A stretch of 64,000 bases of DNA from Oopsacas minuta (Eukaryota > Animalia > Porifera): positions 658,286 through 722,285 of the forward strand of contig JAKMXF010000210.1 in assembly GCA_024704765.1 (NCBI GenBank), given 5' to 3'. Every line of letters begins with the position of its first letter. Positions within the stretch are counted from its first letter, which is position 1. The position numbers and the translations under genes were made by a program. The notes beneath the pieces were generated by a model, which searched no databases, was not told where the DNA came from, and saw only the letters and a program-made list of their open reading frames with translations. Positions 27,609 through 48,001 of this stretch are shown piece after piece.

Positions 27609-29444
27609 ATGTGGATATTGATACACCAACAACCTCGCAGTAATTCTCATACTCAAAGCACTTCTAGAGATTTTAAGTCAGCTGTTTCTTACTGTTTGGT
27701 ACCAGGTAGAGGCTACACTGTGGGTAGGATAGCTTGTGATCTTACTATACCCAATGAACAGTCTGTTAGCAAGAATCATGCCACAATAACAGTACATATT
27801 AAAGATGATACTGAGCAGAGAAATAAACTTTTCATCAAGGATACATCAACTTTTGGTACTCACATTAACTCAAATAGGCTGCATAACTCAGAACGTGAGT
27901 TATTTGATGGTGATCAGATTGTGTTTAGTCAGAGGGTAGAGATTGGAGGTAGGTACTCTCTTAAATGGGAGTCTATAGTGTTGTGCTTCTCCAAATTCGA
28001 GAAATCTCTCTTCGCTATAAAAGCCAGGGTTATAAAGTACAGCATAACGGTACTAGACAGCTGGGATATCAGTGTAAGCCATCTCATAGTCGGGGAACTC
28101 AGAACCACCAGCAAGGTCCTGTGTGCTCTATCTAAAGGCGTGCCTATAGTGAGATTCAGCTGGGTAGACCAATTGATCCGCTCCATCGAAGACTTTACTC
28201 CTATTCCATCACCTTCAGAACATATGCCACACCTCTCTAATGTTTCTGAGATTAGTGATGTAAATCTGTTTGCTGTTAATTTGAAACGGCTTAAACTTTT
28301 TGAAGAGAAACGTTTCTATTTCTTGAATAGTAAAGAATTTGATCAATATAGCATACCAATCTCATACTGTAGTGGTATTAGCACTTTGATTGAAGTGTTG
28401 GATGTGACATATGCGACATATGACAGGTACTCAGCTGATGACTCTATTGTAGTGTCAGGTAATTATGACAGATTCTATTCAGTACCAGGAGGAGAGGAAT
28501 TCATAGCAAAATTGGAATTAACTCTTGAGAATGTTTGTAAGAGTTTAATTCCAGATTCTAAGATTGTCCATGCTATTATGCAAGTTTCTACAGAGGGTCT
28601 CTTCCCTCAGACTCCTCAATCTCAGGCGTCAGAACAGTACGTGACTCCCCCGGAGTACTATGTCCCTATCCATAGTCCTGTTCTATTTCAAAATAATGTA
28701 TCTCAGTCAGAGTCTCTTACTAGTTCTCCTAAGAAGAAGAAAAAGAAAATTGATCAAACTGGAGTAAAGACTTGCTGTATGTTTTCCTTATTTGATGATG
28801 AATCTAAGGAGAATTCTGATGGTTCTTATCCTACAAAACCAAATAGTGAAAATACTGATCAACAGCTAACCTTTTTCAAGGATAGTCCCCCGAATCATGA
28901 ATATAACTCCTTTCAAAATGAAGATATTCCAGCTCGAAAATACGACTTACTAACTATAACTGATGAACTGACCTCTTGTCCTGATACTCTGGAAACATGG
29001 ATCCCTACTAATAACCCTCAACAGGGAGAATCTAGTCCTATTGAAACTAAGAAGAGTTACAGATTGGTAGGTAAATGCTTCGTTAAAGCTCATAAGATGA
29101 AAGAGCCTTCCTATTTACGTCCTCTAATCCCTATTAGAGCAGGCTCAGGGCTACTGAAGAAGGATCCTAAAGGCAACCCATTCTCCTCAGATGAAGAAGA
29201 TCCTAGATTATCTGGATCATTTATCGAATCAAAAGATTCCATCAAGAAATTTGCTAATACCTCTTCAAGTCCTCTGTTAATTAACAAGAATATAGCAAAA
29301 CTTGAAATAAAAACTACTCCTAAAAGTAAGCGCAAGAGTTTAGAGAAATCTCAGATTACATCAAAGAAGAAATCTCTCTTAGTTGTTCTGGATGGTTCAG
29401 ATTCTGATGACGATGAATACCTTAAGGTCACTCCTCTCAAATAG
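27609..29444 (+). CDS. NBN: Nibrin/NBS1 (FHA-BRCT-BRCT)
   Basis: MWIL..YTVGRIAC..SVSKNHA..IKDTSTFGTHIN (FHA), SHLIV..TSKVLCALSKGVPIV..W (BRCT1), RLKLFEEKRFYFL (BRCT2), acidic C-terminus. Confidence 0.85.
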   Translation: MWILIHQQPRSNSHTQSTSRDFKSAVSYCLVPGRGYTVGRIACDLTIPNEQSVSKNHATITVHIKDDTEQRNKLFIKDTSTFGTHINSNRLHNSERELFDGDQIVFSQRVEIGGRYSLKWESIVLCFSKFEKSLFAIKARVIKYSITVLDSWDISVSHLIVGELRTTSKVLCALSKGVPIVRFSWVDQLIRSIEDFTPIPSPSEHMPHLSNVSEISDVNLFAVNLKRLKLFEEKRFYFLNSKEFDQYSIPISYCSGISTLIEVLDVTYATYDRYSADDSIVVSGNYDRFYSVPGGEEFIAKLELTLENVCKSLIPDSKIVHAIMQVSTEGLFPQTPQSQASEQYVTPPEYYVPIHSPVLFQNNVSQSESLTSSPKKKKKKIDQTGVKTCCMFSLFDDESKENSDGSYPTKPNSENTDQQLTFFKDSPPNHEYNSFQNEDIPARKYDLLTITDELTSCPDTLETWIPTNNPQQGESSPIETKKSYRLVGKCFVKAHKMKEPSYLRPLIPIRAGSGLLKKDPKGNPFSSDEEDPRLSGSFIESKDSIKKFANTSSSPLLINKNIAKLEIKTTPKSKRKSLEKSQITSKKKSLLVVLDGSDSDDDEYLKVTPLK

Positions 29445-29851
29445 GATTTCAATAATCAGAGGAAATTCTCTTAACTCTATTTAAAATTAAATTACATATT
29501 TTGAATTCTGTAAGGAATTAGAGGATCCTGATAATTAACTAAATCTTCTCGTGTTATCGCTTTGGGTCTTAGCTCTTAGGTGTAACTTGTAATGTTTAGT
29601 TTGGGAAGTTTAAACAATGAGTTTGAGGTTTAACAATCTTAACTCATATAGCATATAGATATTTATTTCTGAACCTTGTGTAAAATTACTCTACAGTTTT
29701 GTGAACTTTTCAGTGAACTGCTTACCTAGCTTACATTATTTATTTAAAAGAATGCTAGCGTTATCATTGATATGTTATCCCCACGAGTTATTACCCCAGA
29801 ACTTTATCTGATATTGTTTAGAGGAATATATTGTAAGGTTATTTGATACAT

Positions 29852-31042
29852 ATGGCCTCTCAATATTCCCAAAACTTGTTTTGTGTGAGTAGCTGTAACA
29901 CTCAAACTTGTAGAATTCTACTAACCAAACTTGATATCATTAATCCTTGCAGGAGAATAGTCAAATTCCCTGGAAAAGATATGAAAGGTATACCAATTAA
30001 ACCTGACTCCCTAGCTACTATAAACGCACATCAGTTTGAGTTTGAGTTTGAACTGATAGATAGTGAATCTCCTCTCAAATCTAAATGCATCTCTCCATAC
30101 AATAAATTGCTACAAAGTCTAACTGATTGCGTTAACAAAGAGCATCTACCCTTGTCTATTCTACAAGAAGTTCCACATAAATGGGAGCGTTACGGTGACC
30201 TAGTTTTATTGCCTCACAACTCCTTTCTTTCCAGTGATTGGTGTAAATGTGTAGATTTATGGAAAGCAGTGAAAACAGCTCTACACTGCGATAGAATAGC
30301 TAAGAATTTTCCTATTAGTAACAACGAGTATAGAAAATCTCAAGCTGTTATGTTGCTAGGACAAACTGGCTTGGTGAGGCATTTAGAAAATGGCATTGTA
30401 TACTGTTATGACGTCACCAAATGTATGTTCTCATCCGGTAATGTAACTGAGAAGCTGAGGTTATCCCACATAGATTGTTCTAACGAGGTAGTTGTTGATT
30501 TATTCGCTGGAATTGGTTATTTCACTTTAACTTATTTAGTGTATTCTAAAGCTAAACTTGTACATGCTTGTGAATGGAATAGCGATGCAGTAAAATCACT
30601 GGAAATTAGTCTAATGGAGAATCGTGTAAGAGATAGGTGTGTTATCCATGCAGGTGATAATCGTATTGTAGCTCCTTCCGGTGTAGCAGATAGAGTTAAT
30701 CTAGGTTTGATTCCCTCCAGTGAGTGTAGTTGGGAAACTGCTTGCAAGTGTTTAAAGCCTAAGGGCGGTACAATGGTTGTCCATGGAAATGTCAATAGCA
30801 TACTTATAGAGCCAAGACTATTAAGCGTAGCTTCTTGCATTAAAGACAAATATTCAGTCAAAGATGTGTGGTGTATGTGGTCAGAAATGGTAAGGCATTC
30901 ATTCCATGATATATTGAGTAGAATATATCCATTGAGTAGCTGGACAGTTGAGGCTAAACATTTGGAGAAAATAAAGTCTTATGCACCACACATAGATCAT
31001 TTGGTTGTTGTGTTAGTTTGTAAACCAGTTGATTGTCACTAG
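29852..31042 (+). CDS. TRMT12: tRNA wybutosine-synthesizing protein 2 (TYW2)
   Basis: PHKWERYGDLVLL, YDVTKCMFSSGNVTEKLR, VVVDLFAGIGYFTL, ADRVNLGLIPSSE. Confidence 0.93.
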   Translation: MASQYSQNLFCVSSCNTQTCRILLTKLDIINPCRRIVKFPGKDMKGIPIKPDSLATINAHQFEFEFELIDSESPLKSKCISPYNKLLQSLTDCVNKEHLPLSILQEVPHKWERYGDLVLLPHNSFLSSDWCKCVDLWKAVKTALHCDRIAKNFPISNNEYRKSQAVMLLGQTGLVRHLENGIVYCYDVTKCMFSSGNVTEKLRLSHIDCSNEVVVDLFAGIGYFTLTYLVYSKAKLVHACEWNSDAVKSLEISLMENRVRDRCVIHAGDNRIVAPSGVADRVNLGLIPSSECSWETACKCLKPKGGTMVVHGNVNSILIEPRLLSVASCIKDKYSVKDVWCMWSEMVRHSFHDILSRIYPLSSWTVEAKHLEKIKSYAPHIDHLVVVLVCKPVDCH

Positions 31043-31136
31043 ATTCTTATTAGATTATATTTGTATATTTACTAATAATAATATATTATTCAGTTATTGT
31101 CATATATATTGTATAATTAGCCCAAAATACTAAGTG

Positions 31137-33044
31137 ATGCAGTGTAGCAAGGTTTTTGGATATACTCTGTTCTCAGAATATTTGATCAACAATGCTCCTC
31201 CACCAATTTACAAGGATAATCGTCGTAGAGCTCGAGGAGTGTCAGACCTGGAATCTAGGCGGAATTACACCATCCTCACTTCTATACAAAGCCCCGAAGA
31301 TCTGCAAATTGTATATTCTCATTCTCAGACTTGTTATTTCAAACACTCATATTTATCTCTTCTAGCTAACAAGACAGGAGAATCCTACAAGAAATGCACA
31401 CTACATCATATTGGGTGTAAATTAACTCGTTTCGAGCACTTCTTGCGAGATATCGAGCAATCTGTATTCAGACACGATTGTATTCCTCCAAAGGATTCAT
31501 TCCCGAAGGAGTACGATTGGCTAACAGAACATTTAATTCAACAATTCTATAATAATGCTCTTAACTTTAACGAGTTCCTCGGAGTTCTTCTAAAACTTAC
31601 CAACTTCTCTAATGCGAATATTCTCACAGCTCAGGCGGTCTGCTGGGATGTATACTACAGAGAATATTATTCTGTGTTGCAGAAGCTGGCTTTAGTTAAT
31701 GAGCATTCAGCTGGGTTTATAGAACAGCTGTTCGCTATTTTCACTCAATTAGATAGACATATTTCCTGCGAAATTTCTCCCTTCTTGATGAAGCAGTTTA
31801 TCATTTGGTGGATTAAAGAATCAGATACGAATCCTGACAAACATTTCGAACTAATTGAACAGTGGTACAGATCTTCAGACGGGCAAGAATCCACTATTGA
31901 CTTTATTGAGTTTCTGGATTTACTATATAAGTTATTTTTCAAACATTTTCCTATTACTACTCGACACTTCTTGCTTAAAGATGCCTACCATAGTCTGGTG
32001 TGTAAAGTTCTTAAGAAGGGGTATCTAGCTAAATGTGGACCTAACAACAGTAAGTATCAAATTCGATGGATGATCTTATATCCAGATAAACTGGACTACT
32101 ACAAGCGTAAATCTGAAGAAGAAATGAGTTTAAAGGGCACCATCCTTCTGGGTGAAAAAGCTGTCGTTAAAAATGTTTACGATGACGACAAGAAAGGCTA
32201 TTACAGATTCACAGTATCATATACTAGCACTGCTAGACAGTTCTCTATCCGTGCTGATGATATTCGTATCAGAATGGCTTGGGTTACTGCTATTGATCAA
32301 GCTATCGATGTGCTTAAAGGGAATAAGGGGTTGCACGTCTTTGAGAAACCTCTGGATCTAACACGTGCAGACAAGGACTTACTGGCTTCTACGATGCATC
32401 CTGGCGCTAAAATGCTCGACCTCACAGAATCAGAGTCCATACAAGAAATTGCTATATGTTCTGTACCTCTACCTGCCCCATATAACGGTCAGATAGATCC
32501 GTTACTACAACCTCTTTCCTCTTTCAGTGGAGATGACAAATCTCTGCCTACGTCATTAGATCATAACAGAGATCATAGCAGAACTCTTCACATCAGACAT
32601 ATAGATAGAGAGTTTCCCATGGATGATTTCACGAATTCTATATACGAGTCTAGCTCCCCGGGTGCCGTTAATTCGGACAAATGTACTGAATTTCGCTCCA
32701 AACGATTCCCCAGCATGTCTTCTAGTGAAGACGAAGGGACCTTGCCCCCTCTCCCAGGTAGGCAAATTCAACACACTCCACTTCTCCTAGAATGTATTAA
32801 GAATCCTATTCCAGTTCCTAGAGATTTGAACAAGAGAGCATCATTCGGAGATGTCCCGTCCTCAAACCGAGTTAGCATGACTACTCATTCTTCCTTTGGT
32901 ACATTCAACCACTTCAGAGTGAGCTCAGAAGAAATCCCTCCTCAGCTAGCTCCACGAGTCAAGAACGTGCTCCCCAAAGTTCCCCCCAGGACATTTCCTC
33001 AAGTTCCTGACAGGGTGGACTCTCTCAGGAAGTATAGTAGCTAG
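31137..33044 (+). CDS. SWAP-70/DEF6-like PH-domain protein with Pro-rich tail
   Basis: EF-like helical N-terminal half, then VLKKGYLAKCG..RWMILYP..YY..KGTILL..ADD..RMAWVTAI (SWAP70-type PH). The C-terminus is Pro-rich rather than coiled coil. Confidence 0.7.
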   Translation: MQCSKVFGYTLFSEYLINNAPPPIYKDNRRRARGVSDLESRRNYTILTSIQSPEDLQIVYSHSQTCYFKHSYLSLLANKTGESYKKCTLHHIGCKLTRFEHFLRDIEQSVFRHDCIPPKDSFPKEYDWLTEHLIQQFYNNALNFNEFLGVLLKLTNFSNANILTAQAVCWDVYYREYYSVLQKLALVNEHSAGFIEQLFAIFTQLDRHISCEISPFLMKQFIIWWIKESDTNPDKHFELIEQWYRSSDGQESTIDFIEFLDLLYKLFFKHFPITTRHFLLKDAYHSLVCKVLKKGYLAKCGPNNSKYQIRWMILYPDKLDYYKRKSEEEMSLKGTILLGEKAVVKNVYDDDKKGYYRFTVSYTSTARQFSIRADDIRIRMAWVTAIDQAIDVLKGNKGLHVFEKPLDLTRADKDLLASTMHPGAKMLDLTESESIQEIAICSVPLPAPYNGQIDPLLQPLSSFSGDDKSLPTSLDHNRDHSRTLHIRHIDREFPMDDFTNSIYESSSPGAVNSDKCTEFRSKRFPSMSSSEDEGTLPPLPGRQIQHTPLLLECIKNPIPVPRDLNKRASFGDVPSSNRVSMTTHSSFGTFNHFRVSSEEIPPQLAPRVKNVLPKVPPRTFPQVPDRVDSLRKYSS

Positions 33045-33281
33045 TTTCAAACGATTTATAGCTGAGCTGTTTTTATGTAAATGTTGGAATGTTTTATTAT
33101 TTTTAGACTGGAAATTTTGGTTTAATTTTTCAAATACATAAAATAGTACGTACGTATATCCATATTTGGATTTGAAAAATATATACGTAATTACGTATAT
33201 AATAATAATTTCAAAGAAATACAAAAGTCTCAACGCATATAAGCTCATTTGTTGTAATCTAGATGGAGTCTTGAGATAAGT

Positions 33282-33989
33282 ATGCTTTCTATTATTCTGT
33301 CTGTTTCTCTGGTTATATTTTATTTGTCTCTGTCCAGTAGTCAAACTGGTATTCGTGTTGAAGATTTCGGGTACTCTTATGGCAACACTATGTCTACTGT
33401 ACTTGTATTCTACATAGAACTATTCAATGAGGGACACACACCAGTTGAAGTTGAAGTTAGAAATGAAGAGTGTTGTCTGTCTATTGAGAAAGATGATATA
33501 GATTGTCAATCTATGAAACTTGCTACAAAAATATCCAGAATTTCACCCCTGGGCAGTCAGGGATCCACTAAGACAATAGAGTTCATGTTTCACAGTATGT
33601 ATATTATGAATAGAGAAGGTGTATGTACTTTCTATGTAATAGATCGTAGACATAAACACAAAGAACATGTTCGTATTGCCTTTAATACAATGATGCAGAA
33701 CTCTATCGTCTGTAGCTCTGTTGATCTTGACACAGAGCGTAACTGTCATCCAGCGAATTGTTTGTTAAAGTACATGGGTAAGAGAAACTTCTTCAACAAG
33801 AACACTCTCCGATGTGAATCTATTGTTGAGTGTATGACTCTATCAGCTGACAGGAGAGAGATTATTGCTTACTATAACCCCGAGACTAATATGTGTGTGA
33901 GTCTAGACGAAGGGATAGGAGTAGTGGAGAGTGCTGAAGAAGATGATTTACCTTTTCATGACGATTTGATGAGTGAGAACATATTGTAG
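33282..33989 (+). CDS. Secreted Cys-rich protein of unknown function
   Basis: Signal peptide, about 9 Cys, acidic C-terminus; family not recognised. Confidence 0.65.
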   Translation: MLSIILSVSLVIFYLSLSSSQTGIRVEDFGYSYGNTMSTVLVFYIELFNEGHTPVEVEVRNEECCLSIEKDDIDCQSMKLATKISRISPLGSQGSTKTIEFMFHSMYIMNREGVCTFYVIDRRHKHKEHVRIAFNTMMQNSIVCSSVDLDTERNCHPANCLLKYMGKRNFFNKNTLRCESIVECMTLSADRREIIAYYNPETNMCVSLDEGIGVVESAEEDDLPFHDDLMSENIL

Positions 33990-34089
33990 TAGTTCGTAAT
34001 ATTCCAGATTATTCTAATCTCCTACAACGGTATATTGTGTTATATTATTGTATTATGTGTTGATTAGTATATCTAGTGTGATTAAGCAG

Positions 34090-34932
34090 ATGGATGTTAA
34101 AATGAATTTCAGGATATACGGGCTCTGCTCCCTAGCAGCTGTTGGTCTGTACGGACTCCCTATTGTATTCCCACAACATTTTAAAAGTTTTTATCGCAAG
34201 ACAGATTCCAAAGTTCCCCCAGAACTTGACACACATGTGCGCAAGATCGCCTATTTGATGGGTTTTCTGCCCAACCAGGTGGCCAATCTAAATGTGTTCA
34301 TTACCAAAGAGATAAATAGCATGTCTTTTGGGCACTTGTCTTCTCCCTGGGGGGCTTATATCGGTCTTCCTAGACAGGTCTTGTGGACTGGTATTGATGA
34401 CGTAATGAAGTCTACTCTCCATAAGAAGGGACTGCCCGTAGATTGGGAGTCTGACTTTGGGAAGAGATTAGCCAATTGTATAACTCCCTCAGGCAGTCAA
34501 ACAAGTTTCCGTATTGCTCACGAACTGGCTCACCTCCAATCTAATCACTTATCATACTATCTCTTAATTACTCCTCTCCATCTCTTGTCCCTGTTTATCT
34601 TTCTAGAGTTTGGCTCACCTTATATTCAGAAAAGATTTAAACTTACTTCAGGAGCTGTCGGCATTCCTGTACTATTGTTTTGGGTATTAGCTCTGTGCTA
34701 CGACTTGAGACGAACCAGACACAAATTTGAATTTGACGCTGATAATACGGCCGCTTCTGTTGGACGGGGGTTTGCAGAGGGTGGTATAGAGTTATTCTTT
34801 CGACAGAGACAAGTGTCTCTCTTGTTGGGAAACGATGACGAGCATTCTACCTCAACTCACCCCAGTTGTCTTGATAGACAGAAGCGACTACAGGAAGTTA
34901 TGATTAATAAATATCAGCTTACATTTGATTAG
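34090..34932 (+). CDS. TMEM177: TMEM177-like mitochondrial inner-membrane protein with intact M48-type HExxH
   Basis: GAYIGLP, PVDWESDFGKRL, FRIAHELAHL and GGIE correspond to TMEM177 blocks (GAVVGIP, VDWRSPAGARL, FALAREVVYL, GGVE, from memory). Two TM segments. Confidence 0.72.
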   Translation: MDVKMNFRIYGLCSLAAVGLYGLPIVFPQHFKSFYRKTDSKVPPELDTHVRKIAYLMGFLPNQVANLNVFITKEINSMSFGHLSSPWGAYIGLPRQVLWTGIDDVMKSTLHKKGLPVDWESDFGKRLANCITPSGSQTSFRIAHELAHLQSNHLSYYLLITPLHLLSLFIFLEFGSPYIQKRFKLTSGAVGIPVLLFWVLALCYDLRRTRHKFEFDADNTAASVGRGFAEGGIELFFRQRQVSLLLGNDDEHSTSTHPSCLDRQKRLQEVMINKYQLTFD

Positions 34933-35000
34933 ATTTGTTCTACTATTTTTGCCAGATATTAGGACCAGAAACTAAATATAATTATAAATCTTATTAGCTT

Positions 35001-38000
35001 ATGATTAGTCAGAAATGGTACAGCAATGGATTAGAATTGAATGAAGATGATGAGAGGAGCTACACAAGAGAGGAGTTCTCTCTATTTTCTTTTGATTATT
35101 CCAACTCATTCATTCCATACTCTGCAGAATTCTATAAGGATACAGTTAATCTCTTCTCTATAATATTTCTATCATTTTCTGATTTCGTTACGAATCATAA
35201 AGCTATGTTTAATCTATTCAAACAACATTTAATGTTATCTGAGGAATCTGCTCTAACACACGTGTCTGTTCCCAATCTATCTCACTTACAACATTGTCAC
35301 GTATTTCTGCATTTCTTAGTATACTCGCTAGCTTCTGCGTCTCCTAGAGAATGGAATAAATGTGATCTCCAGTTGTTCGGAGATACAGTATCTTCACAGC
35401 TTGAAACTGTCTGTCTCTTAGTTATCCAACTCAGTGAAGCAAACAGGTCTTCTAACATGATGATCCCCTCCCCTCACGCCCCTCAAGAAGTACACCCTTA
35501 CACTCAGCTTCTTATCGACATTAAGACACACCTCTTGTTATCTCACCACTACATTACCAGACTAGTACCAGAGTATAAGAGTCATACATTTGAATTTATA
35601 AAGTATATTTGGACAGATCTGTTAGAACAGTCACTTGTCATCTTCTCTACTCACTCAGATCTGCTACGATTAAACTTCTCACCTTTCAATTGCTATTCTC
35701 ATATAGAAATTTGGTGCTTGTCAGCCCAGCTGTCAGATATATTGACAGCAGATGGCCAGGTGTCTGGCTTTTGGAATTTATTTATTCCTACTCTCCTCTC
35801 ATTTTCTGATTCTATTTCTTTACCTTTGGAGAAAAACAAGTTTGTTTGGTGGTTATTAGTTAACCTTTCAAGAGTGTTACCTCTTTATATGCATAAACAT
35901 CAAATAAGTTGTTGGGAGCTCTGTAGGGACTGTGTTATTACTTTAGCTAATCTACAATCTGATTCTAGTTCTCCGCAGCTAGCATTCTCTCTATGGAGTA
36001 TAATTAAGCTATCCAAGTATTGGGGACAATCAATGGATTCTGTTATGCTATTATGGGAATCGTTTAGTAAGAAATTGGGAGATATGACCAATAACACTAA
36101 TCATAAGGCAATGTCTGTAAGAAACATATCTGAATTGAGATATCACATTATCAATAATCCCTCAGAAGTAAATAATCCCCTACAAGTTTCATCTTTCGAA
36201 CTTTTTCTGCGATTTTTCTCTCTCCAATTTAGTCTGGTCGAGGAATTGCCTACTGATTACTGGAAGCGATATAAAGGTAGGTTTTACTCAAAACTCTCAT
36301 TTCGCCGGCTACAAAATCTTAAATCAGATTCTATTCTTAATCTCTATCTGCTTACATTTGTTCTTGGCTACAAAACTGATGCTGATGACGTAATTGACAA
36401 ATCGAGTGAATTATTTCTCAAACTGTTATCAAACTCTTCTTCTGTCGTCCCGTCAGCTACGCTGTTGTTAATTTGGGAATCTTTGTTTGGACTTTTCCAT
36501 GTCTTTACAGATAAGGCAATCAGTTTATCGAACTACCTCTCTAAGATTCTACCCAAACTCTGTGAGTACCAGAATATTGCCATGTTTGATGCTAATTATG
36601 CCAAGTTACATTGGGAAGTTTGTAATTTGATGTGGCTTGAGTTACCAGAGCTTAGTAGCTGTCCGGAGCTAATCCATTCTGTATTGGAGGTTCTGCAGGA
36701 GTTATACGTCTCGCACTATTCTGCATTCCATAAGGAGCATATTGTTGTTACAGCTCTTAATATTACTCAAGTATTGATAAGTATATATAACTTGTTAGTT
36801 GATAACTCATCTGTAAGAGAAACTTCTGAGAAGGTATGTCTGTTTCTTTGGGAATTTGGCTACCCTAACTGGAGACAGGATCATCTCTCAGTCTCATCCG
36901 TCCCTGAAATGGGACCTCTTATCTCTCGTCTCATTCTCCTCTCTATCATATCTGAGTGTAATCCTGTTGTGAGCTTCAGCGATGTAGTTAAAGAAGTTTT
37001 GTTCTGTAACAACTTGCCTTGTCAAGTCGGGTGTCTTTTTATACAAGGTTTTATCTGTGAAGAAATCGGTAGGCGACATGTTTCGCAACATTTGATATTC
37101 ATACAGCTGTTCACCAAAGCTTGGGTGCTGTACATAATACAAACTCACAGATACCCACAATTTACTCCTTCTCTCATTGCATGCACCAATCTGTTGAGGA
37201 CCCTTTCAATCTTTGGACAGACAACTACTGTCAGCTGTCTTTCTGACGTCATTATTATTTTCGAGTCTCTCTTGAAACAAATTACACTGACTGGAGAGAG
37301 CTACAGAGACTCTCAATATTTCTTTATTTCAGAATTCTTAGAGTGGATTGAGCCTCATCTCTGCGACCCGAGCACTTCAAAGGAATGTTTATTCGCGATA
37401 TACAGATTATCTTATAGTCTGGTGCGGTACTGTCCAGCTGTAATTTACAGTCACACTCAGACCAATTGCATCCTACCCAGACTCATTGAATACCTCTTCT
37501 TCCCTACACATTCTCTGTCCAAGCTTCCTCACCCAGCACACCTAGACTGTGTGAGAGGATTCCTCATAGAGTTCTTGTCCAGTCTATTTATGCTGCAGTC
37601 AGAAACTGACCAGTTTATTCAGCGAAAAATACGACAACTATTTTCTAAATATTTTTATCGATTCCAACAACAATCTCAAGGAAACGTTCTTGTTTCTTCC
37701 AAAGACAATCCTTTCCTATCTCTGTTTGATTCGGACTTGGTTACTGAGCAGAATTCATTTCCAACTAATCTACACCCTGCATTGTGTGCTCTCTCTGTTA
37801 TACGGGGATTGTTCTTAAAACTTCCTCAGCCTCCGACTACTCTCATACAGACTCTGCTTTTCTTGCATAAAATGACAGATATTGCTTCTAACGAGCTCTT
37901 AGCTAGTTCTGGAGAACACTTACTCTTTCCAATGCTCGGTTGTCTGCTAGCTTGTAACGAATGTCCTACCAATAGAGAACCCCAGCAAATTAGAGAGCTA

Positions 38001-38288
38001 GCTGAAACTGTTATTCAGAGGATCCTAAGAGCTGTCACAAGGATGACAAGTATCTGTCACAGACATAAGTTAGTCGAATCTATAACTACTTTTGTTGCAG
38101 CGAACATGCCTTCTTGCCATGGAAAGGTATTCACTACTTTAAGGATAATTGCTCAGATAGATCCGCATCTCATAGCTCTTTGCATCGGAGAGTTCCGCTC
38201 TCTGTTACTAGAGTTTGAGAAAGGTAATCCTAAAGTAGCAGCAGAAATACGAATAGAACTGAACAGATTAGAGAGTATATTGAAGTGA
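35001..38288 (+). CDS. MMS22L: MMS22-like protein, intronless, 1095 aa
   Basis: Long helical repeat protein. LWESFSKKL, SFELFLRFF, WKRYKGRFYSKLSFRRLQNL match MMS22L conserved blocks. Confidence 0.85.
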   Translation: MISQKWYSNGLELNEDDERSYTREEFSLFSFDYSNSFIPYSAEFYKDTVNLFSIIFLSFSDFVTNHKAMFNLFKQHLMLSEESALTHVSVPNLSHLQHCHVFLHFLVYSLASASPREWNKCDLQLFGDTVSSQLETVCLLVIQLSEANRSSNMMIPSPHAPQEVHPYTQLLIDIKTHLLLSHHYITRLVPEYKSHTFEFIKYIWTDLLEQSLVIFSTHSDLLRLNFSPFNCYSHIEIWCLSAQLSDILTADGQVSGFWNLFIPTLLSFSDSISLPLEKNKFVWWLLVNLSRVLPLYMHKHQISCWELCRDCVITLANLQSDSSSPQLAFSLWSIIKLSKYWGQSMDSVMLLWESFSKKLGDMTNNTNHKAMSVRNISELRYHIINNPSEVNNPLQVSSFELFLRFFSLQFSLVEELPTDYWKRYKGRFYSKLSFRRLQNLKSDSILNLYLLTFVLGYKTDADDVIDKSSELFLKLLSNSSSVVPSATLLLIWESLFGLFHVFTDKAISLSNYLSKILPKLCEYQNIAMFDANYAKLHWEVCNLMWLELPELSSCPELIHSVLEVLQELYVSHYSAFHKEHIVVTALNITQVLISIYNLLVDNSSVRETSEKVCLFLWEFGYPNWRQDHLSVSSVPEMGPLISRLILLSIISECNPVVSFSDVVKEVLFCNNLPCQVGCLFIQGFICEEIGRRHVSQHLIFIQLFTKAWVLYIIQTHRYPQFTPSLIACTNLLRTLSIFGQTTTVSCLSDVIIIFESLLKQITLTGESYRDSQYFFISEFLEWIEPHLCDPSTSKECLFAIYRLSYSLVRYCPAVIYSHTQTNCILPRLIEYLFFPTHSLSKLPHPAHLDCVRGFLIEFLSSLFMLQSETDQFIQRKIRQLFSKYFYRFQQQSQGNVLVSSKDNPFLSLFDSDLVTEQNSFPTNLHPALCALSVIRGLFLKLPQPPTTLIQTLLFLHKMTDIASNELLASSGEHLLFPMLGCLLACNECPTNREPQQIRELAETVIQRILRAVTRMTSICHRHKLVESITTFVAANMPSCHGKVFTTLRIIAQIDPHLIALCIGEFRSLLLEFEKGNPKVAAEIRIELNRLESILK

Positions 38289-38446
38289 GATATATGAATT
38301 GTATCAATCATTGTGTGTATATTCAAGTTTGTTTTGAATGAATCATATTACGTACATATTAATTTTGGCATTTTCTTTACTCTTCATAAACTATTCGCAA
38401 ATCTACTTTTACCATTCATTTCAGTTCTATTCTATTTGGAATTGCA

Positions 38447-39445
38447 ATGCAGTTTGCTCCTCGTTGGGTTAGATACTCACTAACAAATCGTCGTAACTTA
38501 TGGATAGTTCTTTTCCTTGCTTTGGTAATTGTCTCTGTTTGGTATTTGAAGACTCCATCATTGGGGACAGAATCTATGGAGCTGCCAGAGGAATTGAACG
38601 AAGTGCTTTTTGAGACGGAATGTTTTTCTCATAACCCGTATGTTCTCTTTTTCAACCGAATACCTAAGTCTGGAAGCACCACTCTACAAGATTTCTTTCG
38701 TACTTTGTCAAATTTAGTTGACGTGGAGACAGACATCTACCCAGAAGGCGCGACCAAATGGACTCTATCGAAAATAGAAGAAGTAGAGAATCGCGCTATG
38801 GCTCTATTAAAACGCGCGAAATTGATGCACGGTGGGCACGGTATGGACGGTTACTCTCCTCGAGGCATTTATATTCAACATTTCTACTACACAGAATTTC
38901 CTGGGTTGTCAGCATTTGGAATGAACTACGGCTACATTACTTTAGTGCGAGAGCCTGTGGATAGGGTTATATCTGCTTACTATTACTATCATTTTACTAA
39001 GAATTTTAAAATACCAGTTGAAGATAAAATGACTTCTCTCTCTGATTGTGTTAAAAATGAATTGTATGGCTGTGAGGCTAATATAATGACTCAGTATTTC
39101 TGCGGGCATGAAGACAGCTGTGTCTCTAAGAATGGAGACCACAAGTACGCGCTCTACACTGCTAAACAGAATCTGTTAAAATATATCGCAATAGGTCTCA
39201 CTGAAGATTTCTTATCCTCAATCAAACTATTTCAGAAATTATTACCAGACATTCTTCCTCGGTTTGTTGAGCTACCGACCTCACTGAAGAAGCAGAATGC
39301 TAATGAAATCGATTACAAGAAAGATGTCTCTGAGAGTGACAGAATACTAATTAGAGAAAAAAACGTTTTAGATATACAAATATATGCTTTCGCAAAAGAC
39401 TTGTTTGATGCGAAACTTAAGGAGTGTAGTATTTCAGGAGAATGA
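38447..39445 (+). CDS. Uronyl/heparan-sulfate 2-O-sulfotransferase family, type II Golgi protein
   Basis: N-terminal TM; FNRIPKSGSTT (5'-PSB), YITLVREPVDRVISAYYY (3'-PB), QYFCGH, IGLTEDF. Confidence 0.88.
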   Translation: MQFAPRWVRYSLTNRRNLWIVLFLALVIVSVWYLKTPSLGTESMELPEELNEVLFETECFSHNPYVLFFNRIPKSGSTTLQDFFRTLSNLVDVETDIYPEGATKWTLSKIEEVENRAMALLKRAKLMHGGHGMDGYSPRGIYIQHFYYTEFPGLSAFGMNYGYITLVREPVDRVISAYYYYHFTKNFKIPVEDKMTSLSDCVKNELYGCEANIMTQYFCGHEDSCVSKNGDHKYALYTAKQNLLKYIAIGLTEDFLSSIKLFQKLLPDILPRFVELPTSLKKQNANEIDYKKDVSESDRILIREKNVLDIQIYAFAKDLFDAKLKECSISGE

Positions 39446-39552
39446 TCTTTTGATAGAATTGTAATTATTTCTTTATTTTGCTATATTATAAGTAATTAGT
39501 TTTTAAATAACATGATTTGTACCTTTATGCTTATTTCTAGGGATCTTATTAG

Positions 39553-40794
39553 ATGGCTACAGTAGCAGTAGGACCTGAAATAGAACCACTTGAAGATTCT
39601 ATTGAAAGAATTAAAGCGGAAGTTAGAGGAAAGTTTGCAGAATTTGTAGAACGGGTGCTAGCAAGAGAAGCAGCTCTTCTGGTTAAACTAGATGACATAT
39701 TTGCCATTCGAAGAGCACAAATAGAAGAATTTCAAGGAAGGAAAAGAGAACTAGAAGAGATGCGAAATCAGAACAAATCTAATCTAAGGTATGAAGAGCT
39801 GAGATCTATGCAATCAGAATTTATGAATAAGATTGAAACCAAAATAAAAGAATTAGAACACCAGCTGGTCAATTCTTTCGTTCATTTTGATTGGAGTTCC
39901 AATATTTTCAATGAACTGTCTGAGCTGGGCAATCTTCATGTGCTGGATAAATATACATTAACTCCAAAAGTTGAATACACTCACAAACAGGAAGTTGCTT
40001 TAAAGAGAAGCAAGGTAGGAGATCTGGAGGGAGAATTGTACGGACCGCGAGTTATCTGTATAGATCCTAAAAGCAATAATATATTTATCTCTGAACATAA
40101 GAATAATCGAGTTCAAAAGTTTGATAGAAATGGAAATTATTTAACAACTTTGGGAAATGGTAAAATGAAAGCTCCTGACGGAATAGCTATTCATAATGAC
40201 CAGATATACATTGCACAATATGAAGGAAATCATGTACAGGTCTATTCCCTTCTCACAGATAAATTTGTTGGACGGATCGGAGAGAAGGGATTTGGACGAG
40301 GGCAATTGGATTGTCCTACTGGACTCGCTATCAGTAAGAAGAATAGTTATCTGTACGTATGTGACAGGAAAAACTGTAGGGTACAAGTGTTCGAGCAGGG
40401 AGGTGAATACAGATCTAAATTTGGCAGCGAAAATTTAAATAATCCAACGGACATAAAGATGACTGGAGAGGAGATATTCGTGTTGGATGAGGCCAATCCC
40501 TGTATCCACGTGTTTAATTACGCAAATGAGTGTGTAAGGTCTCTAATCACCAATGGACCTAGAGAACAAACTCTAGACCCATTTTGTTTCTGTTTCGATT
40601 TAGATAGAAACTTTTATATTACCGATTTTGACAGGAATTGCGTATCTATTTTCAATCCAATCGGCGAATCCCTCGGCCAGATCGGTTCTCATACGTCAAG
40701 AGTTCTCTATACACCTTCTGGGATTGCTATAGATATGCTAGGCAGACTAATTGTCATCGACAGGAGTAACAACGGTTGTATTAGATTTTTCTAA
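39553..40794 (+). CDS. Coiled-coil + NHL-repeat beta-propeller protein (TRIM-like without RING/B-box)
   Basis: N-terminal coiled coil; six NHL blades (GP..I.ID..NNIFISE..NNRVQKF, P.GIAI, P.GLAI..YVCDRKNCRVQVF). Confidence 0.88.
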   Translation: MATVAVGPEIEPLEDSIERIKAEVRGKFAEFVERVLAREAALLVKLDDIFAIRRAQIEEFQGRKRELEEMRNQNKSNLRYEELRSMQSEFMNKIETKIKELEHQLVNSFVHFDWSSNIFNELSELGNLHVLDKYTLTPKVEYTHKQEVALKRSKVGDLEGELYGPRVICIDPKSNNIFISEHKNNRVQKFDRNGNYLTTLGNGKMKAPDGIAIHNDQIYIAQYEGNHVQVYSLLTDKFVGRIGEKGFGRGQLDCPTGLAISKKNSYLYVCDRKNCRVQVFEQGGEYRSKFGSENLNNPTDIKMTGEEIFVLDEANPCIHVFNYANECVRSLITNGPREQTLDPFCFCFDLDRNFYITDFDRNCVSIFNPIGESLGQIGSHTSRVLYTPSGIAIDMLGRLIVIDRSNNGCIRFF

Positions 40795-40907: not shown

Positions 40908-43900
40908 TTATAATCGATTATTTCTGCTTCTTATCCAACTAACGACCTCGCTTAAGTAAGTTAATCCAGCTGAAGCTGCTATACTGTCAAACACTTCAAA
41001 ATGAGTTGACAGCTTGTCATTAGATAGTGTTTTCGAGTACTGCCCTGCACAAGGACAGAACTGTGACATGTGGTCTGCCTTGACCTGATTACACTTAAGA
41101 CAGACCAGATCCTGAAGTAAATACGTCCTTGATAGATTCTGTACTATCTCTACAAGTTCTGTTTCGATGAAGTCTCGATTGTAAGGCTGTCCACATGTAC
41201 ATTTCCAAATAATCCAACCACTTCTCTCATCATACATGTTGTTAGCATCTCGTATCACATCCAAATCCCTCGCGTAATCGCAATAGTTACACACTATCTG
41301 CGGTAGGACATAAGACCTACAGGGATTATTGAATACGCCTAGTTTGGAGAATTCTCCTACATTCAGCAATTTCAAGAGGTCGCGTTTTATCTTAGTTATT
41401 TGTGATTCTAAGTTGGAGTCAAGGGAAATTATCTTGCATATTATTTTGACAAAATTAAGGAGATCAGACTTTCCTTGTGTTTCTGAGTAATTACGGTCTT
41501 GTCTGACGTCATACACTATTTTATACATTTGTTGACTTATCACATCTTCCACTCGTTGAATTGTGTAATTTAACACACTCATTCCAATGGCAGACGGCTG
41601 TTGTGAGGAAGTTTTCTTAAGAATGGGGGTCTCTCCTCCCCTGGTTATATTGTACTCGTCATGTGCGTGAGTATAAATATCTGTGATATGCTCTTCTATC
41701 ACTCTGCTAAACATTTGCTTGTAATCTGGGTCATTGGCCAAGTAATCTTGTAGATTCCATCGCATGTCAAGTTTTCTTTCTTCAGAAATGAGCTCGTTCT
41801 GAGTTGTTTCTACAAGCACACCTCCGTAATTGGCAGTATCCATCCACAAGAGATATTCCCAGCACTGCACATGTTCCAGTCCAACATAATGAAATAAATC
41901 TTTATTATGAATACTGCTAAGAATAAACTCTGAGTATGATAGAGCATCTTCTATCTTCTTCTTTCTAGTACTAATCACGAGTTTGTTAAAGGAAGCGTAT
42001 ATAATGCTGGCTCCCAGCCTTTTGAACTCTGCGATGAATTGCATGAATATCTTCTTCATCAGTTTGTGTATCATCCTACAGAGTCCGGGCTCGTAGAGTA
42101 AAGAAGAAGGAGACTTTAGCCAACGATAGAAATGTTGTTGTAGAATATCAGCCATCTCGTTACCCTTATGGATATCTTTAACCCAGCTCCATACCATAGA
42201 CCTGAGGATTTTAAATGTAGGCGAGCAGAGTGCAGCTTCGTCGAATGAAGATAGAATGTTGCTCGAGCTGACTCCACTCTCAAGCATTTCTTCTAGAGAG
42301 GCTTGAGGGATAAAGTCAAAGCTGATGGAGGATACAGTTCCTCCTTCATAGTCATTGATATGAGAGGATTGGAGAATAGCAACGAGGGCAAGAGAGTGCA
42401 CTGCAAACTCAATGCATACAGTAGCATAAGTGCCAGGATTGTTTAGCTCCACCTGTTTTACTTCGTTGGGATTTGAAAGGAAACGGAAATCAGTTTGTTG
42501 TTTTCCTCCCAAGTCTGGATCTGGTGAGCGGGACACCCAGAGTAAATGGTTATTACGTGTAAGGTTTCGCGAGAAATAAATATCTACCAAGAACCCAAGT
42601 ACATCCTGTGAAATATTTCCTACTGGAACACCTCCATAACGTGAGAGCTGCTTCTGTAGTTCAAAACTGTGTAATGAAACAAGAAAAGAAGAAAGCATTG
42701 ATTTGGCGGCTACTCTCTGCCAATCTAGAGCTGGGTAGTTGTTATCACTGTCACTGAACGCAAGTTGAACAAGAGGAAAGTCTTTGAGAGAATGAATGGA
42801 TTTGGACAGCTCGCTACGGGATAAGCTAGTTTGTAACAAAACTATTGTAGGTCCTTTCTTCTCTCGGTTGTACTCACCTAACAATTTATCGATATGCTTA
42901 AATGCTTGTCTGTACTCTGTGTCAACTCTAGCTTCGAAAGAATATTCTTGTTGTGGTAAGGGGTTAACTTGACCCGTGTCATTAAATGACTGCCATTCAT
43001 TCTCGTAAACTTTTGAAAGATTCGAAAGTTTGTTTTTCCTAATTGTGTCCAGGATAAAAGTATGACATTTTCTAACTCCTGTAACAAAGATCCCGATAAT
43101 TCCTCTAGATTCCTTCCCACTCTGGTACAAATAAATAATTTTCATTTCTTTTCGTAAATAATTTGATTCTGTTTCTTGCTTTGAGCTGAGATGATGAAGT
43201 TCAAACACATCGACCTCTCCGCTAGCCACCGATCTTGTGAACTCTTTGTTTACGCTACAAACACAGCCAAACTCCTTTATTATTCTGAACATCAGAGGAA
43301 CTTGAGTTTCATAAATACCTTCGACATTAGGCCCAGAAAGTTGCATCGTCCATGAGCTAATCTGCTCGATGAAATGTCTTTCTGGAATTCTAAATTCGTA
43401 AAGATATTTGGCTGGACAGGAGCGTGGTAGGTGCTTATTCACTTTTCTACAGACACTTCCTTGCAGCTCAAAATCTTCAGGGGCCTTGCAGTTAATGTAG
43501 AATATTCTTGGAATCTGTAGCTTGATTGTGTGTAGATCTCTGCCCAGTAATACCCATAAGATGAAACGCCCGGGTGTTAGGTCTTCGCAGATCTCAATAA
43601 TCTCCCAAGCATCCTCTCCGAGAGAGATAGTTTGCTTCCTCAGAAAGTCAGTCATATTTCGGTGAGTTGGTTCACTTTCTATTGACATGCCGAGTATTTG
43701 TCGCTCAACACCCTGAGAGGCGCTATGGCTTTTAGCAAGTTTACGGTTTTTTCTTTGTATCTGCCATTTCTTTTTGTGAAAACTTACCCAATCTTCCATC
43801 TCTTTCTTACTGGTTCCTATTGATGGAGGGTTACCCAATGCTATCCGCCAGTTTACTTGAGTAGTTTGGTCACTAGCAATATTCTTCTTAAATTTACAGA

Positions 43901-47498: not shown

Positions 47499-48001
47499 TC
47501 TTTTAGCAATTTTATGTGATCTAATCTGTCTGATAGAGGGAGAAATATACAATTTATTTTTTAGGTTCACTAACAATAAGATCGCTTATTAACTTTTGTA
47601 ATTAATCTTTAGCTCTAAACCCGTATCTTCTCCTGAAAGTTATTCTGATTTAACATTCAAGAGAAATTATCCTTTGTATTAATAAATAATTTGATTTCTA
47701 TTATCCTACACTATCATTTCCTGAAATCTCCACGTAGGTATTTATTTGATTGTTTGTGTACTTTTCTGTTTCCTCAGAGTATATTTGTTAAATAGAACTT
47801 TACAAATTTAATACTGTAATGTCTGTAATGATTTCGTATTATGTTTGTGTATTTATTAGGAAAATATTCTTCTAAATTCGGAAACTTAAATTAATGTTAA
47901 AATTGTATGTCCACTTACATGACGTGACACAAACTTATTATGTTTTATTCATGTGTATAAAAGAGTGTAACACGTCCAGGATATACATCCCAAATATTCA
48001 A

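What the first reader, a model, noticed from the sequence alone, without database searches (positions are those of the whole stretch)
34090..34932. TMEM177 homolog with an intact M48 zinc-metalloprotease active site
The segment that reads FALAREVVYL in human TMEM177 (a complex IV assembly factor with no known catalytic activity, recalled from memory) is FRIAHELAHL here (HExxH, 34519-34533). It is followed after two TM helices by EFDAD (third zinc ligand E..AD, 34729-34743) and STHPSCLDR (THP..R, about 34852-34878), the full motif set of M48 peptidases (OMA1, HtpX, Ste24). This suggests TMEM177 is a pseudoprotease derived from M48 and that this lineage may retain an active ancestral enzyme.
Basis: partly seen in the sequence, partly recalled or inferred. 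Interest (0 to 1): 0.78.

Follow-up and report, generated by a model that had tools for sequence, protein, structure and literature searches.

The report
Sponge TMEM177 keeps protease active site
This glass-sponge gene is the counterpart of the human mitochondrial assembly factor TMEM177, but it still carries the full zinc-protease active site, which shows that TMEM177 of bilaterian animals is a protease that lost its catalytic residues.

Summary
An intron-free 280-aa ORF (34090-34932, +) carries HELAH, EFDAD and THPSCLDR at the stated coordinates. It scores above Pfam's cut-off for Peptidase_M48.

- **Nearest named relatives** are all "TMEM177" (sponges, Nematostella, jellyfish, amphioxus, gar).
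- **Homology to bilaterian TMEM177** covers the full length: hhalign 99.9 %, E 3e-36, 256 columns.
- **Structure:** models of both the sponge protein and gar TMEM177 (pLDDT 95.3 each) match Ste24/ZMPSTE24, BepA and other M48 structures best.
- **Site distribution:** of 130 full-length representatives, 47 keep both His, the catalytic Glu and the ligand Glu. Named ones are sponges, cnidarians, one Trichoplax copy, a choanoflagellate and Chlorokybus. All rows of one well-supported clade (98/96) lack at least one ligand, usually His to Arg, and it holds every named bilaterian.
- **Selection:** the gene is under purifying selection (dN/dS about 0.10) and sits in conserved synteny in three glass-sponge assemblies.

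Not shown: expression, zinc binding, proteolysis, substrate and localisation. I could not measure ligand geometry because no model coordinates were available.

No searchable paper links TMEM177 to M48. UniProt's automatic names already call the cnidarian and placozoan proteins M48-domain proteins. The scan had not noted this before.

The parts
34090..34932 (+). Coding sequence (280 aa plus stop) of the glass-sponge TMEM177 orthologue, an M48-type gluzincin. An alternative in-frame start lies at 34102.
   Evidence: ORF list, sequence, Pfam M48 above cut-off, TMEM177 relatives. dN/dS 0.10 against a close relative.
34114..34170 (+). N-terminal transmembrane helix (aa 9-27), followed by the family's P-x-x-F-P stretch.
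   Evidence: Hydropathy, model helix 7-26, N-terminal comparison.
34288..34371 (+). Three-stranded sheet of the zincin upper subdomain (aa 67-94). It ends in the GAYIGLP edge strand, whose G92 and P94 are nearly invariant across the whole family.
   Evidence: DSSP strands 67-72, 78-81 and 89-94. Conservation.
34492..34539 (+). Active-site helix (aa 135-150) with HELAH at 34519-34533. H144 and H148 are the presumed zinc ligands and E145 the presumed general base.
   Evidence: Sequence and model helix 135-150. The motif aligns with HEIGH of Ste24p and HEISH of E. coli HtpX.
34546..34698 (+). Transmembrane hairpin (aa 153-203) between HExxH and the ligand Glu.
   Evidence: Hydropathy 154-172 and 185-203. 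Model helices 153-183 and 187-222.
34729..34743 (+). EFDAD (aa 214-218), the gluzincin ExxxD motif. E214 is the presumed third zinc ligand. D218 is kept in at least 90 % of all 129 aligned family members.
   Evidence: Sequence. Aligned with EYQAD of Ste24p and EFHAD of HtpX. Conservation.
34774..34791 (+). AEGGIE (aa 229-234). The GG pair is nearly invariant in both intact and degenerate family members.
34855..34878 (+). THPSCLDR (aa 256-263), the M48 C-terminal HP....R motif.
   Evidence: Sequence. Aligned with SHPTLAER of Ste24p and THPPLDKR of HtpX. H257, P258 and R263 are invariant in sponges.

Best explanation
The ORF at 34090-34932 is the glass-sponge orthologue of TMEM177. TMEM177 belongs to its own old eukaryotic branch of the M48 zinc-metalloprotease family (Ste24/HtpX/OMA1/BepA type gluzincins).

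Shown here: the protein has one N-terminal membrane helix, a small sheet-plus-helix catalytic domain with HExxH, a membrane hairpin, then the ExxxD 'glutamate helix' and the HP....R motif.

Inferred mechanism: H144, H148 and E214 hold a zinc ion. E145 activates water. The GAYIGLP edge strand binds the substrate chain. The hairpin holds the site at the membrane surface, so that membrane-proximal segments are cut.

Inferred topology: human TMEM177 has its C-terminus in the intermembrane/intracristal space. By homology the sponge catalytic domain faces that space and the short N-terminus faces the matrix.

Inferred function, the weakest step: it acts on the COX20/COX2 assembly module, where human TMEM177 sits.

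In the bilaterian stem the first His became Arg and the other ligands decayed. Fold, edge strand, D218, the GG pair and R263 stayed. Bilaterian TMEM177 is therefore a pseudoprotease that probably still binds, but no longer cuts, its client.
For: - **M48 membership:** Pfam 32.1 bits against a cut-off of 20.3. Motifs align residue for residue with Ste24p and E. coli HtpX (hhalign 95.6 %, E 1.2e-8).
- **Fold:** the model has pLDDT 95.3 and pTM 0.91. Foldseek's top hits are ZMPSTE24/Ste24p at probability 1.00 and TM 0.50-0.55. VIA-align ranks BepA Z 11.9, 3c37 11.8, Ste24p 11.7, ZMPSTE24 11.4, BlaR1 9.0 and minigluzincins 7-8.
- **TMEM177 membership:** named hits; hhalign against bilaterian TMEM177 at 99.9 %, E 3e-36; BLASTP against gar TMEM177 at E 5e-5; Atlas nearest neighbours are chordate TMEM177.
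- **Pseudoprotease in vertebrates:** gar TMEM177 lacks the ligands and has no Pfam hit. Its model still matches Ste24p at Z 11.8, ZMPSTE24 at 11.2 and BepA at 11.0.
- **Distribution:** 47 of 130 full-length representatives are intact. One clade lacking at least one ligand throughout has support 98/96 with the motif columns removed, and it holds every named bilaterian.
- **Selection and reality of the gene:** 30 differences from a close relative, 21 of them at third codon positions, 8 amino-acid changes and none in a motif; dN/dS is 0.10. The gene order is the same in two other assemblies whose proteins are 50 % and 69 % identical.
- **Topology:** the human C-terminus lies in the IMS (PMC5764226) and in the intracristal space (PMC12368266).
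Against: - No RNA run holds the stretch, so expression is not shown.
- Zinc binding and proteolysis are untested.
- The backbone of the family tree is unresolved. Orthology rests on best hits, full-length homology and species-like clades, not on a resolved tree.
- I had no eukaryotic OMA1 or Ste24 sequence to put in the tree.
- Most representatives carry no taxon name, so 'lost once in the bilaterian stem' rests on five named bilaterians inside the clade.
- The N-terminus is short and no mitochondrial-targeting prediction was run.
Confidence: 0.75

Rival explanations
1. The site is intact and binds metal, but the protein works as in humans. It would be a non-cutting scaffold or holdase of the COX20/COX2 module, with the zinc site serving only for stability.
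For: Human TMEM177 works without the ligands (PMC5764226). Groove elements (edge strand, D218, GG pair, R263) are conserved in both intact and degenerate members. That fits a shared binding function.
Against: The general-base Glu and all three ligands, together with HP....R, are kept without exception in sponges. They are also kept in the named cnidarians, a choanoflagellate and a green alga. When constraint is lifted, as in bilaterians, one Trichoplax copy and P0031, the ligands go quickly. A purely structural metal site would not need E145 and H257 as well.
Confidence: 0.15
2. It is an old M48 paralogue that only resembles TMEM177. Under this reading the true TMEM177 orthologue of sponges lies elsewhere or was lost, and bilaterian TMEM177 descends from a different copy.
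For: The tree backbone is unresolved. Trichoplax shows that duplication into an intact and a degenerate copy can happen.
Against: The two Trichoplax copies are each other's sisters (100/100), so that duplication is lineage-specific. The searches returned one sponge clade, one cnidarian clade and one bilaterian clade. Homology covers the whole length, including the N-terminal 130 residues that lie outside the Pfam M48 match. Structural similarity to chordate TMEM177 (TM 0.88) far exceeds that to any other M48 group (at most 0.70).
Confidence: 0.07
3. It is a bacterial HtpX-like gene, either from a contaminant or recently transferred.
For: It is intron-free, and its HExxH, TM hairpin and Glu layout is like that of HtpX.
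Against: It lies between MMS22L and a PH-domain gene, in a run of eight animal-type genes whose order is kept in three assemblies. GC content is the same as in the flanks. HtpX aligns only over the C-terminal 147 columns and is the longest branch in the tree. The nearest relatives are animals.
Confidence: 0.01

Closest known systems
TMEM177 of bilaterians (human COX20-associated inner-membrane protein; here spotted gar P0191 and amphioxus P0029)
   Same: Same length class (280 against about 310 aa) and the same order of elements. These are the N-terminal TM helix, sheet, central helix, TM hairpin and C-terminal helices. Full-length profile match at 99.9 %. Predicted structures agree at TM 0.88/0.80. 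The edge strand, D218, the GG pair and R263 are shared.
   Different: The sponge protein keeps H144, H148, E214 and H257-P258. Gar has R, R, D and R-A at those places. Bilaterian proteins fall below Pfam's M48 cut-off or get no hit. Human TMEM177 has no reported catalytic activity (PMC5764226).
Ste24p / ZMPSTE24 (M48A, CAAX prenyl protease)
   Same: Best Foldseek matches (probability 1.00, TM 0.50-0.55) and VIA Z 11.4-11.7 over 209-220 residues. HExxH, ExxAD and HP....R align.
   Different: Ste24 has seven TM helices that form a large membrane chamber, and it sits in the ER/nuclear membrane. The sponge protein has three TM helices and no chamber. Sequence identity is 14-17 %.
HtpX (M48B, bacterial inner-membrane quality-control protease)
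   Same: Similar size (293 aa). Same layout, with the HExxH helix, then a TM hairpin, then the Glu helix and HP....R. hhalign gives 95.6 %, E 1.2e-8.
   Different: Only the C-terminal 147 columns align. The N-terminal part does not. HtpX is a distant outgroup in the tree.
OMA1 (M48C, mitochondrial inner-membrane stress protease)
   Same: [quoted passage not shown] That is the same compartment as inferred here.
   Different: No cluster named OMA1 appeared among the nearest Atlas rows shown. The only long protein among the 150 best profile hits is one unnamed 557-aa entry. OMA1 is longer and has other flanking domains (established knowledge). I could not compare it directly because I had no OMA1 sequence.
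Minigluzincins (selecase, proabylysin, projannalysin) and BlaR1 (M56)
   Same: They share the catalytic core: VIA Z 7.0-8.1 for the minigluzincins and 9.0 for BlaR1.
   Different: The minigluzincins are soluble, about 105 aa, and have no TM hairpin. BlaR1 is a sensor with an added penicillin-binding domain.

Membership tests
Peptidase family M48 (Pfam PF01435) | Family HMM score above the curated gathering cut-off | tested here: met
   32.1 bits against 20.3, E 1.3e-7, aa 137-269 on profile positions 64-184 of 186.
Peptidase family M48 (Pfam PF01435) | HExxH on the active-site helix | tested here: met
   HELAH at aa 144-148, within model helix 135-150. Aligned with the HExxH of Ste24p and HtpX.
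Peptidase family M48 (Pfam PF01435) | Third zinc ligand Glu on a downstream helix (gluzincin ExxxD), plus the C-terminal HP....R | tested here: met
   E214/D218 and H257-P258...R263 align with EYQAD/SHP..R of Ste24p and EFHAD/THP..R of HtpX. They are invariant in sponges.
Peptidase family M48 (Pfam PF01435) | M48 / gluzincin fold | tested here: met
   The four best VIA matches (Z 11.4-11.9) are all M48 structures. BlaR1 (M56) follows at Z 9.0. Foldseek's top hits are ZMPSTE24/Ste24p. This rests on a predicted model, pLDDT 95.3.
Peptidase family M48 (Pfam PF01435) | The three ligands converge on one metal site | not testable with these tools
   Model coordinates are not exposed to scripts. Only secondary structure and alignment ranges were available.
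Peptidase family M48 (Pfam PF01435) | Zinc-dependent proteolysis | not testable with these tools
   This needs a bench assay.
TMEM177 family | Full-length homology to bilaterian TMEM177, including the N-terminal region outside the M48 match | tested here: met
   hhalign of A1 against A3: 99.9 %, E 3.1e-36, 256 columns covering query 11-270. BLASTP against gar TMEM177 gives E 5e-5.
TMEM177 family | Nearest relatives are TMEM177 rather than another M48 subfamily | tested here: met
   Named hits are TMEM177 or TMEM177-like in Halichondria, Geodia, Nematostella, Rhopilema and Branchiostoma. The Atlas top clusters are chordate TMEM177, at TM 0.88 against at most 0.70 for other M48 groups.
TMEM177 family | Placement inside the TMEM177 group in a tree with outgroups | tested here: inconclusive
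   The sponge clade (90/91), cnidarian clade (97/95) and bilaterian clade (98/96) are each recovered. The backbone joining them to the choanoflagellate, Chlorokybus and Nk52 rows is a polytomy. E. coli HtpX was the only outgroup.
TMEM177 family | Inner mitochondrial membrane location and association with COX20/COX2 | not testable with these tools
   Known for human TMEM177 only (PMC5764226, PMC12368266).
OMA1 (M48C) | Closest similarity to OMA1 and OMA1-type domain layout | not tested
Indirectly, no OMA1-named cluster appeared among the nearest Atlas rows shown. Of the 150 best profile hits, 149 are 86-392 aa and one is an unnamed 557-aa protein.
HtpX (M48B) | Full-length homology to HtpX | tested here: not met
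   Only 147 C-terminal columns align. HtpX is the long outgroup branch.

The most novel reading that the evidence does not exclude
TMEM177 began as an active protease of the cytochrome-oxidase COX2/COX20 assembly line. It faced the intermembrane space and was anchored in the membrane. Sponges, cnidarians and unicellular relatives of animals still use it to cut or clear a client there. In the bilaterian stem an Arg took the place of the first zinc-binding His, with the ligand Glu often becoming Asp, perhaps as a salt bridge that fills the old metal site. That change turned the enzyme into a client-holding pseudoprotease, which would explain how human TMEM177 stabilises COX20 and COX2. Trichoplax, with one intact and one degenerate copy, would show the intermediate stage.
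Probability: 0.3. Interest if true: 0.75.

Novelty: new variant of a known kind. Interest (0 to 1): 0.6.

Why it matters
TMEM177 is a conserved animal mitochondrial protein whose molecular action is unknown. It binds COX20, tunes COX2 stability and marks the intracristal space.

Placing it in the M48 protease family gives it a fold and a probable client-binding groove. It also gives an evolutionary history in which living non-bilaterian species keep the catalytic form.

The open question 'what does TMEM177 do' becomes directly testable. One can assay the sponge or Nematostella protein for proteolysis, find its substrate, and ask whether the human protein binds the same segment without cutting it. 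The family also adds a clean, datable case of an enzyme turning into a pseudoenzyme.

It explains as well why the link was missed. Bilaterian TMEM177 falls below Pfam's M48 threshold, or gets no hit at all, and Pfam has no TMEM177 family.

No paper in the searchable library holds TMEM177 together with M48, HtpX or pseudoenzyme. The papers that hold it together with metallopeptidase, ZMPSTE24 or AlphaFold are, by title, gene-list studies. The raw link is already visible in databases: the Nematostella protein is 'TMEM177' at NCBI and 'Peptidase M48 domain-containing protein' at UniProt.

Tried and rejected
- **PDB by single sequence:** only a spurious DCC hit at E 0.78. The profile search found Ste24p at a weak E of 2, but with the motifs aligned.
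- **NCBIfam:** nothing, as expected for a eukaryotic protein.
- **RNA evidence:** no RNA run holds the stretch.
- **Human TMEM177:** I did not fetch it.
- **Third word search:** a profile of bilaterian members returned only nine proteins. It did give the one named vertebrate.
- **Taxon names:** most representatives carry none.
- **Quick tree of 118 rows:** it suggested an animal-only group (SH-aLRT 82) with the Trichoplax pair next to the bilaterians. The careful tree, with motif columns removed, did not keep either, so I do not claim them.
- **Zinc-site geometry:** not measurable, because no coordinates were available.
- **Contaminant, HtpX or OMA1 readings:** considered and rejected for the reasons given under the rival explanations.

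Full report
**What is in the sequence**

A single uninterrupted ORF runs from the ATG at 34090 to the stop at 34930-34932 on the + strand. It encodes 280 aa, and a second in-frame ATG lies at 34102.
- HELAH at 34519-34533 (aa 144-148)
- EFDAD at 34729-34743 (aa 214-218)
- STHPSCLDR at 34852-34878 (aa 255-263)

Hydropathy gives three membrane-type segments, at aa 9-27, 154-172 and 185-203. The last two lie between HExxH and EFDAD.

Pfam scores the protein as Peptidase_M48 at 32.1 bits, above the curated cut-off of 20.3, with E 1.3e-7 over aa 137-269.

**Is it a real gene**

The window is from a compact animal genome. Earlier notes of this scan call it a glass sponge, Oopsacas minuta. I did not verify the species.

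The gene is the fifth of eight consecutive intron-free genes on the same strand:
1. NBN-like FHA/BRCT protein
2. TRM5/TYW2 methyltransferase
3. PH-domain protein
4. an unknown 235-aa protein
5. this gene
6. MMS22L
7. a sulfotransferase
8. an NHL-repeat protein

The same order is found in two other assemblies, whose orthologues are 69 % and 50 % identical (L003, L002).

Contigs of a close relative (run X5) differ from the window at 30 places inside the ORF. Of these, 21 are at third codon positions and only 8 change an amino acid. None touches a motif and the frame stays open. NG86 gives dN 0.012, dS 0.125 and dN/dS 0.10.

No RNA run holds the stretch, so expression is not shown.

**Which family**

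The word-index search found seven close unnamed relatives (50-83 % identity). It also found 'transmembrane protein 177-like' of the demosponge Halichondria panicea at 34 % identity, E 2e-30. A profile search added Geodia barretti 'TMEM177'.

An exhaustive HMMER profile search of 1.84 billion representatives gave 415 hits at E up to 0.001. Most of the best 150 are proteins of about 240-330 aa. Exact look-ups named some of them:

| Organism | Name(s) given by the source |
|---|---|
| Nematostella vectensis | NCBI 'transmembrane protein 177'; UniProt 'Peptidase M48 domain-containing protein' |
| Rhopilema (jellyfish) | TMEM177-like |
| Branchiostoma | TMEM177-like |
| Batillaria (mollusc) | UniProt TMEM177 (NCBI: hypothetical protein) |
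| Tubulanus (nemertean) | TMEM177-like |
| Trichoplax, copy B3S226 | 'Peptidase M48 domain-containing' |
| Trichoplax, copy B3RQH2 | 'Transmembrane protein 177' |
| Salpingoeca urceolata (choanoflagellate) | locus or transcript identifier only |
| Syssomonas (unicellular holozoan) | locus or transcript identifier only |
| Nk52 (eukprot) | locus or transcript identifier only |
| Chlorokybus (green alga) | locus or transcript identifier only |

A profile of 40 bilaterian members retrieved spotted gar TMEM177 (311 aa, E 1.4e-66).

Three direct comparisons support TMEM177 membership:
- The sponge profile aligns with the bilaterian profile at 99.9 % probability, E 3.1e-36, over 256 columns. That includes the N-terminal 130 residues that lie outside the Pfam M48 match.
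- BLASTP of the window protein against gar TMEM177 gives E 5e-5. It sets FRIAHELAHLQS against FAIGREVARLQG.
- The ESM Atlas puts chordate TMEM177 clusters nearest, by features (0.98) and by structure (TM 0.88/0.80 over 274 residues). An oomycete M48 cluster follows at TM 0.70 and bacterial M48 clusters at 0.62-0.66.

**Fold**

The AlphaFold2 model, built on 129 family members, has mean pLDDT 95.3 and pTM 0.91. Its elements, in order:
- TM helix 7-26
- a three-stranded sheet (67-72, 78-81, 89-94)
- the HExxH helix 135-150
- the long helices 153-183 and 187-222, the second carrying E214 and D218
- helices 226-245 and 260-275

Foldseek against the PDB ranks ZMPSTE24 and Ste24p first, at probability 1.00 and TM 0.50-0.55. 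BlaR1, the M48 protein 3c37 and BepA follow.

The independent VIA-align search of 48,161 chains gives these best matches:

| Structure | Z |
|---|---|
| BepA | 11.9 |
| 3c37 | 11.8 |
| Ste24p | 11.7 (220 residues aligned) |
| ZMPSTE24 | 11.4 |
| BlaR1 | 9.0 |
| selecase | 8.1 |
| proabylysin | 7.6 |

HMM alignments put the three motifs on the matching motifs of two M48 proteases:
- Ste24p: HEIGH, EYQAD, SHP....R.
- E. coli HtpX: HEISH, EFHAD, THP....R (hhalign 95.6 %, E 1.2e-8).

HExxH plus ExxxD is the classic gluzincin signature (established knowledge of thermolysin-type zincins).

**Vertebrate TMEM177 has the same fold without the ligands**

The gar TMEM177 model (pLDDT 95.3, pTM 0.91) gives Ste24p Z 11.8, ZMPSTE24 11.2, BepA 11.0, 3c37 10.9 and BlaR1 8.7. 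Foldseek's top hits are again Ste24p and ZMPSTE24.

At the eight motif positions the window protein and E. coli HtpX both read H-E-H-E-D-H-P-R. Gar reads R-E-R-D-D-R-A-R (segments).

Gar and mollusc TMEM177 get no Pfam M48 hit, and amphioxus gets 16.6 bits, below the cut-off. This is why the link is not seen from the human side.

**Distribution of the intact site**

Among 130 full-length representatives, 47 keep H144, E145, H148 and E214. Most of the others have Arg at the first His, as in 'FAIARE..'.

I built a careful maximum-likelihood tree of 54 rows, with the eight motif columns removed and E. coli HtpX as outgroup. It recovered these groups:

| Clade | Rows | Support | Site state |
|---|---|---|---|
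| Degenerate clade with gar, amphioxus, nemertean, mollusc | 21 | 98/96 | all degenerate |
| Cnidarian clade | 14 | 97/95 | 13 intact, 1 degenerate (P0031) |
| Sponge clade | 6 | 90/91 | all intact |
| Trichoplax pair | 2 | 100/100 | 1 intact, 1 degenerate |

Three changes of state suffice. The backbone between these clades and the choanoflagellate, Chlorokybus and Nk52 rows is unresolved.

In the larger quick tree, the corresponding clade has 71 rows, and all lack at least one ligand.

Several positions stay conserved in both groups: G81, G92 and P94 of the edge strand, E145 (89 % in the degenerate group), D218, G231-G232 and R263. So the groove is kept while the metal ligands are lost.

**How it most likely works**

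- **Shown:** family, motifs, predicted fold, conservation and purifying selection.
- **Inferred mechanism:** a zinc held by H144, H148 and E214; water activation by E145; substrate binding along the GAYIGLP edge strand. The TM hairpin would place the site at the membrane surface, as in HtpX-type enzymes.
[quoted passage not shown] A C-terminal APEX2 fusion stains the intracristal space (PMC12368266). The hairpin returns the chain to the same side, so the catalytic domain would face that space.
- **Inferred function, with least support:** the client belongs to the COX20/COX2 module.

**Comparison with what is known, and novelty**

It is a member of M48 by Pfam's own criterion. It is a member of the TMEM177 family by full-length homology. 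It differs from known TMEM177 in keeping the whole catalytic set. It is not HtpX, because only the C-terminal half aligns. It showed no sign of being OMA1, though I could not test that directly.

No paper in the searchable library holds TMEM177 together with M48, HtpX or pseudoenzyme. The few papers that hold it with metallopeptidase, ZMPSTE24 or AlphaFold are, by their titles, gene-list or unrelated studies. A 2024 review of inactive metallopeptidase homologues does not mention M48 or any TMEM protein.

The link is nevertheless implicit in automatic database names. I therefore rate the gene as a new variant of a known kind, and the evolutionary reading as new to the literature I could search.

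No human sequence was fetched or compared.

Noticed in passing
window 27609-40794 (+); L002 1-12777; L003 1-12729: There are eight consecutive intron-free genes on one strand with spacers of about 70-400 nt: NBN-like FHA/BRCT, TRM5/TYW2, PH-domain, unknown 235 aa, TMEM177/M48, MMS22L, sulfotransferase and NHL. The order is identical in two other glass-sponge-like assemblies at 50-69 % protein identity.
   Followed up: partly
window 33282-33989 (+): A 235-aa ORF with a hydrophobic N-terminus and no Pfam family lies directly upstream of the TMEM177 gene. A gene of 234-237 aa is called at the same position in L002 (5170-5883) and L003 (5205-5909).
   Followed up: no
P0073 and P0050 (Trichoplax adhaerens); P0031 (unnamed, cnidarian clade): Trichoplax has two copies that are each other's sisters. 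One has the intact site. The other has H148 changed to R and E214 changed to V. P0031 shows the same two changes independently inside the cnidarian clade.
   Followed up: partly
alignments A2, A3, A4 (bilaterian TMEM177): In the degenerate clade the first zinc His is Arg in about four of five representatives, and the ligand Glu is Asp in about half. The catalytic Glu, D218, the GG pair, R263 and the edge strand stay conserved. A salt bridge may have replaced the metal site.
   Followed up: no
P0027 (557 aa, ENA contig of 59.5 kb): This longer protein carries the TMEM177-like domain at residues 192-452 with an intact HExxH. It may be a fusion, and its origin is unknown.
   Followed up: no
P0033 (Chlorokybus), P0017 (Nk52), P0100 (Salpingoeca urceolata), P0072/P0196 (Syssomonas); oomycete cluster: The TMEM177-type M48 branch is not restricted to animals. 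Intact members occur in a streptophyte alga and in unicellular relatives of animals. An oomycete M48 cluster is the nearest Atlas neighbour after the TMEM177 clusters. The 2018 TMEM177 paper found no yeast homologue.
   Followed up: partly
window 40908-47576 (-): A very long ORF (2,222 aa) lies on the opposite strand just after the same-strand gene run. I did not examine it.
   Followed up: no
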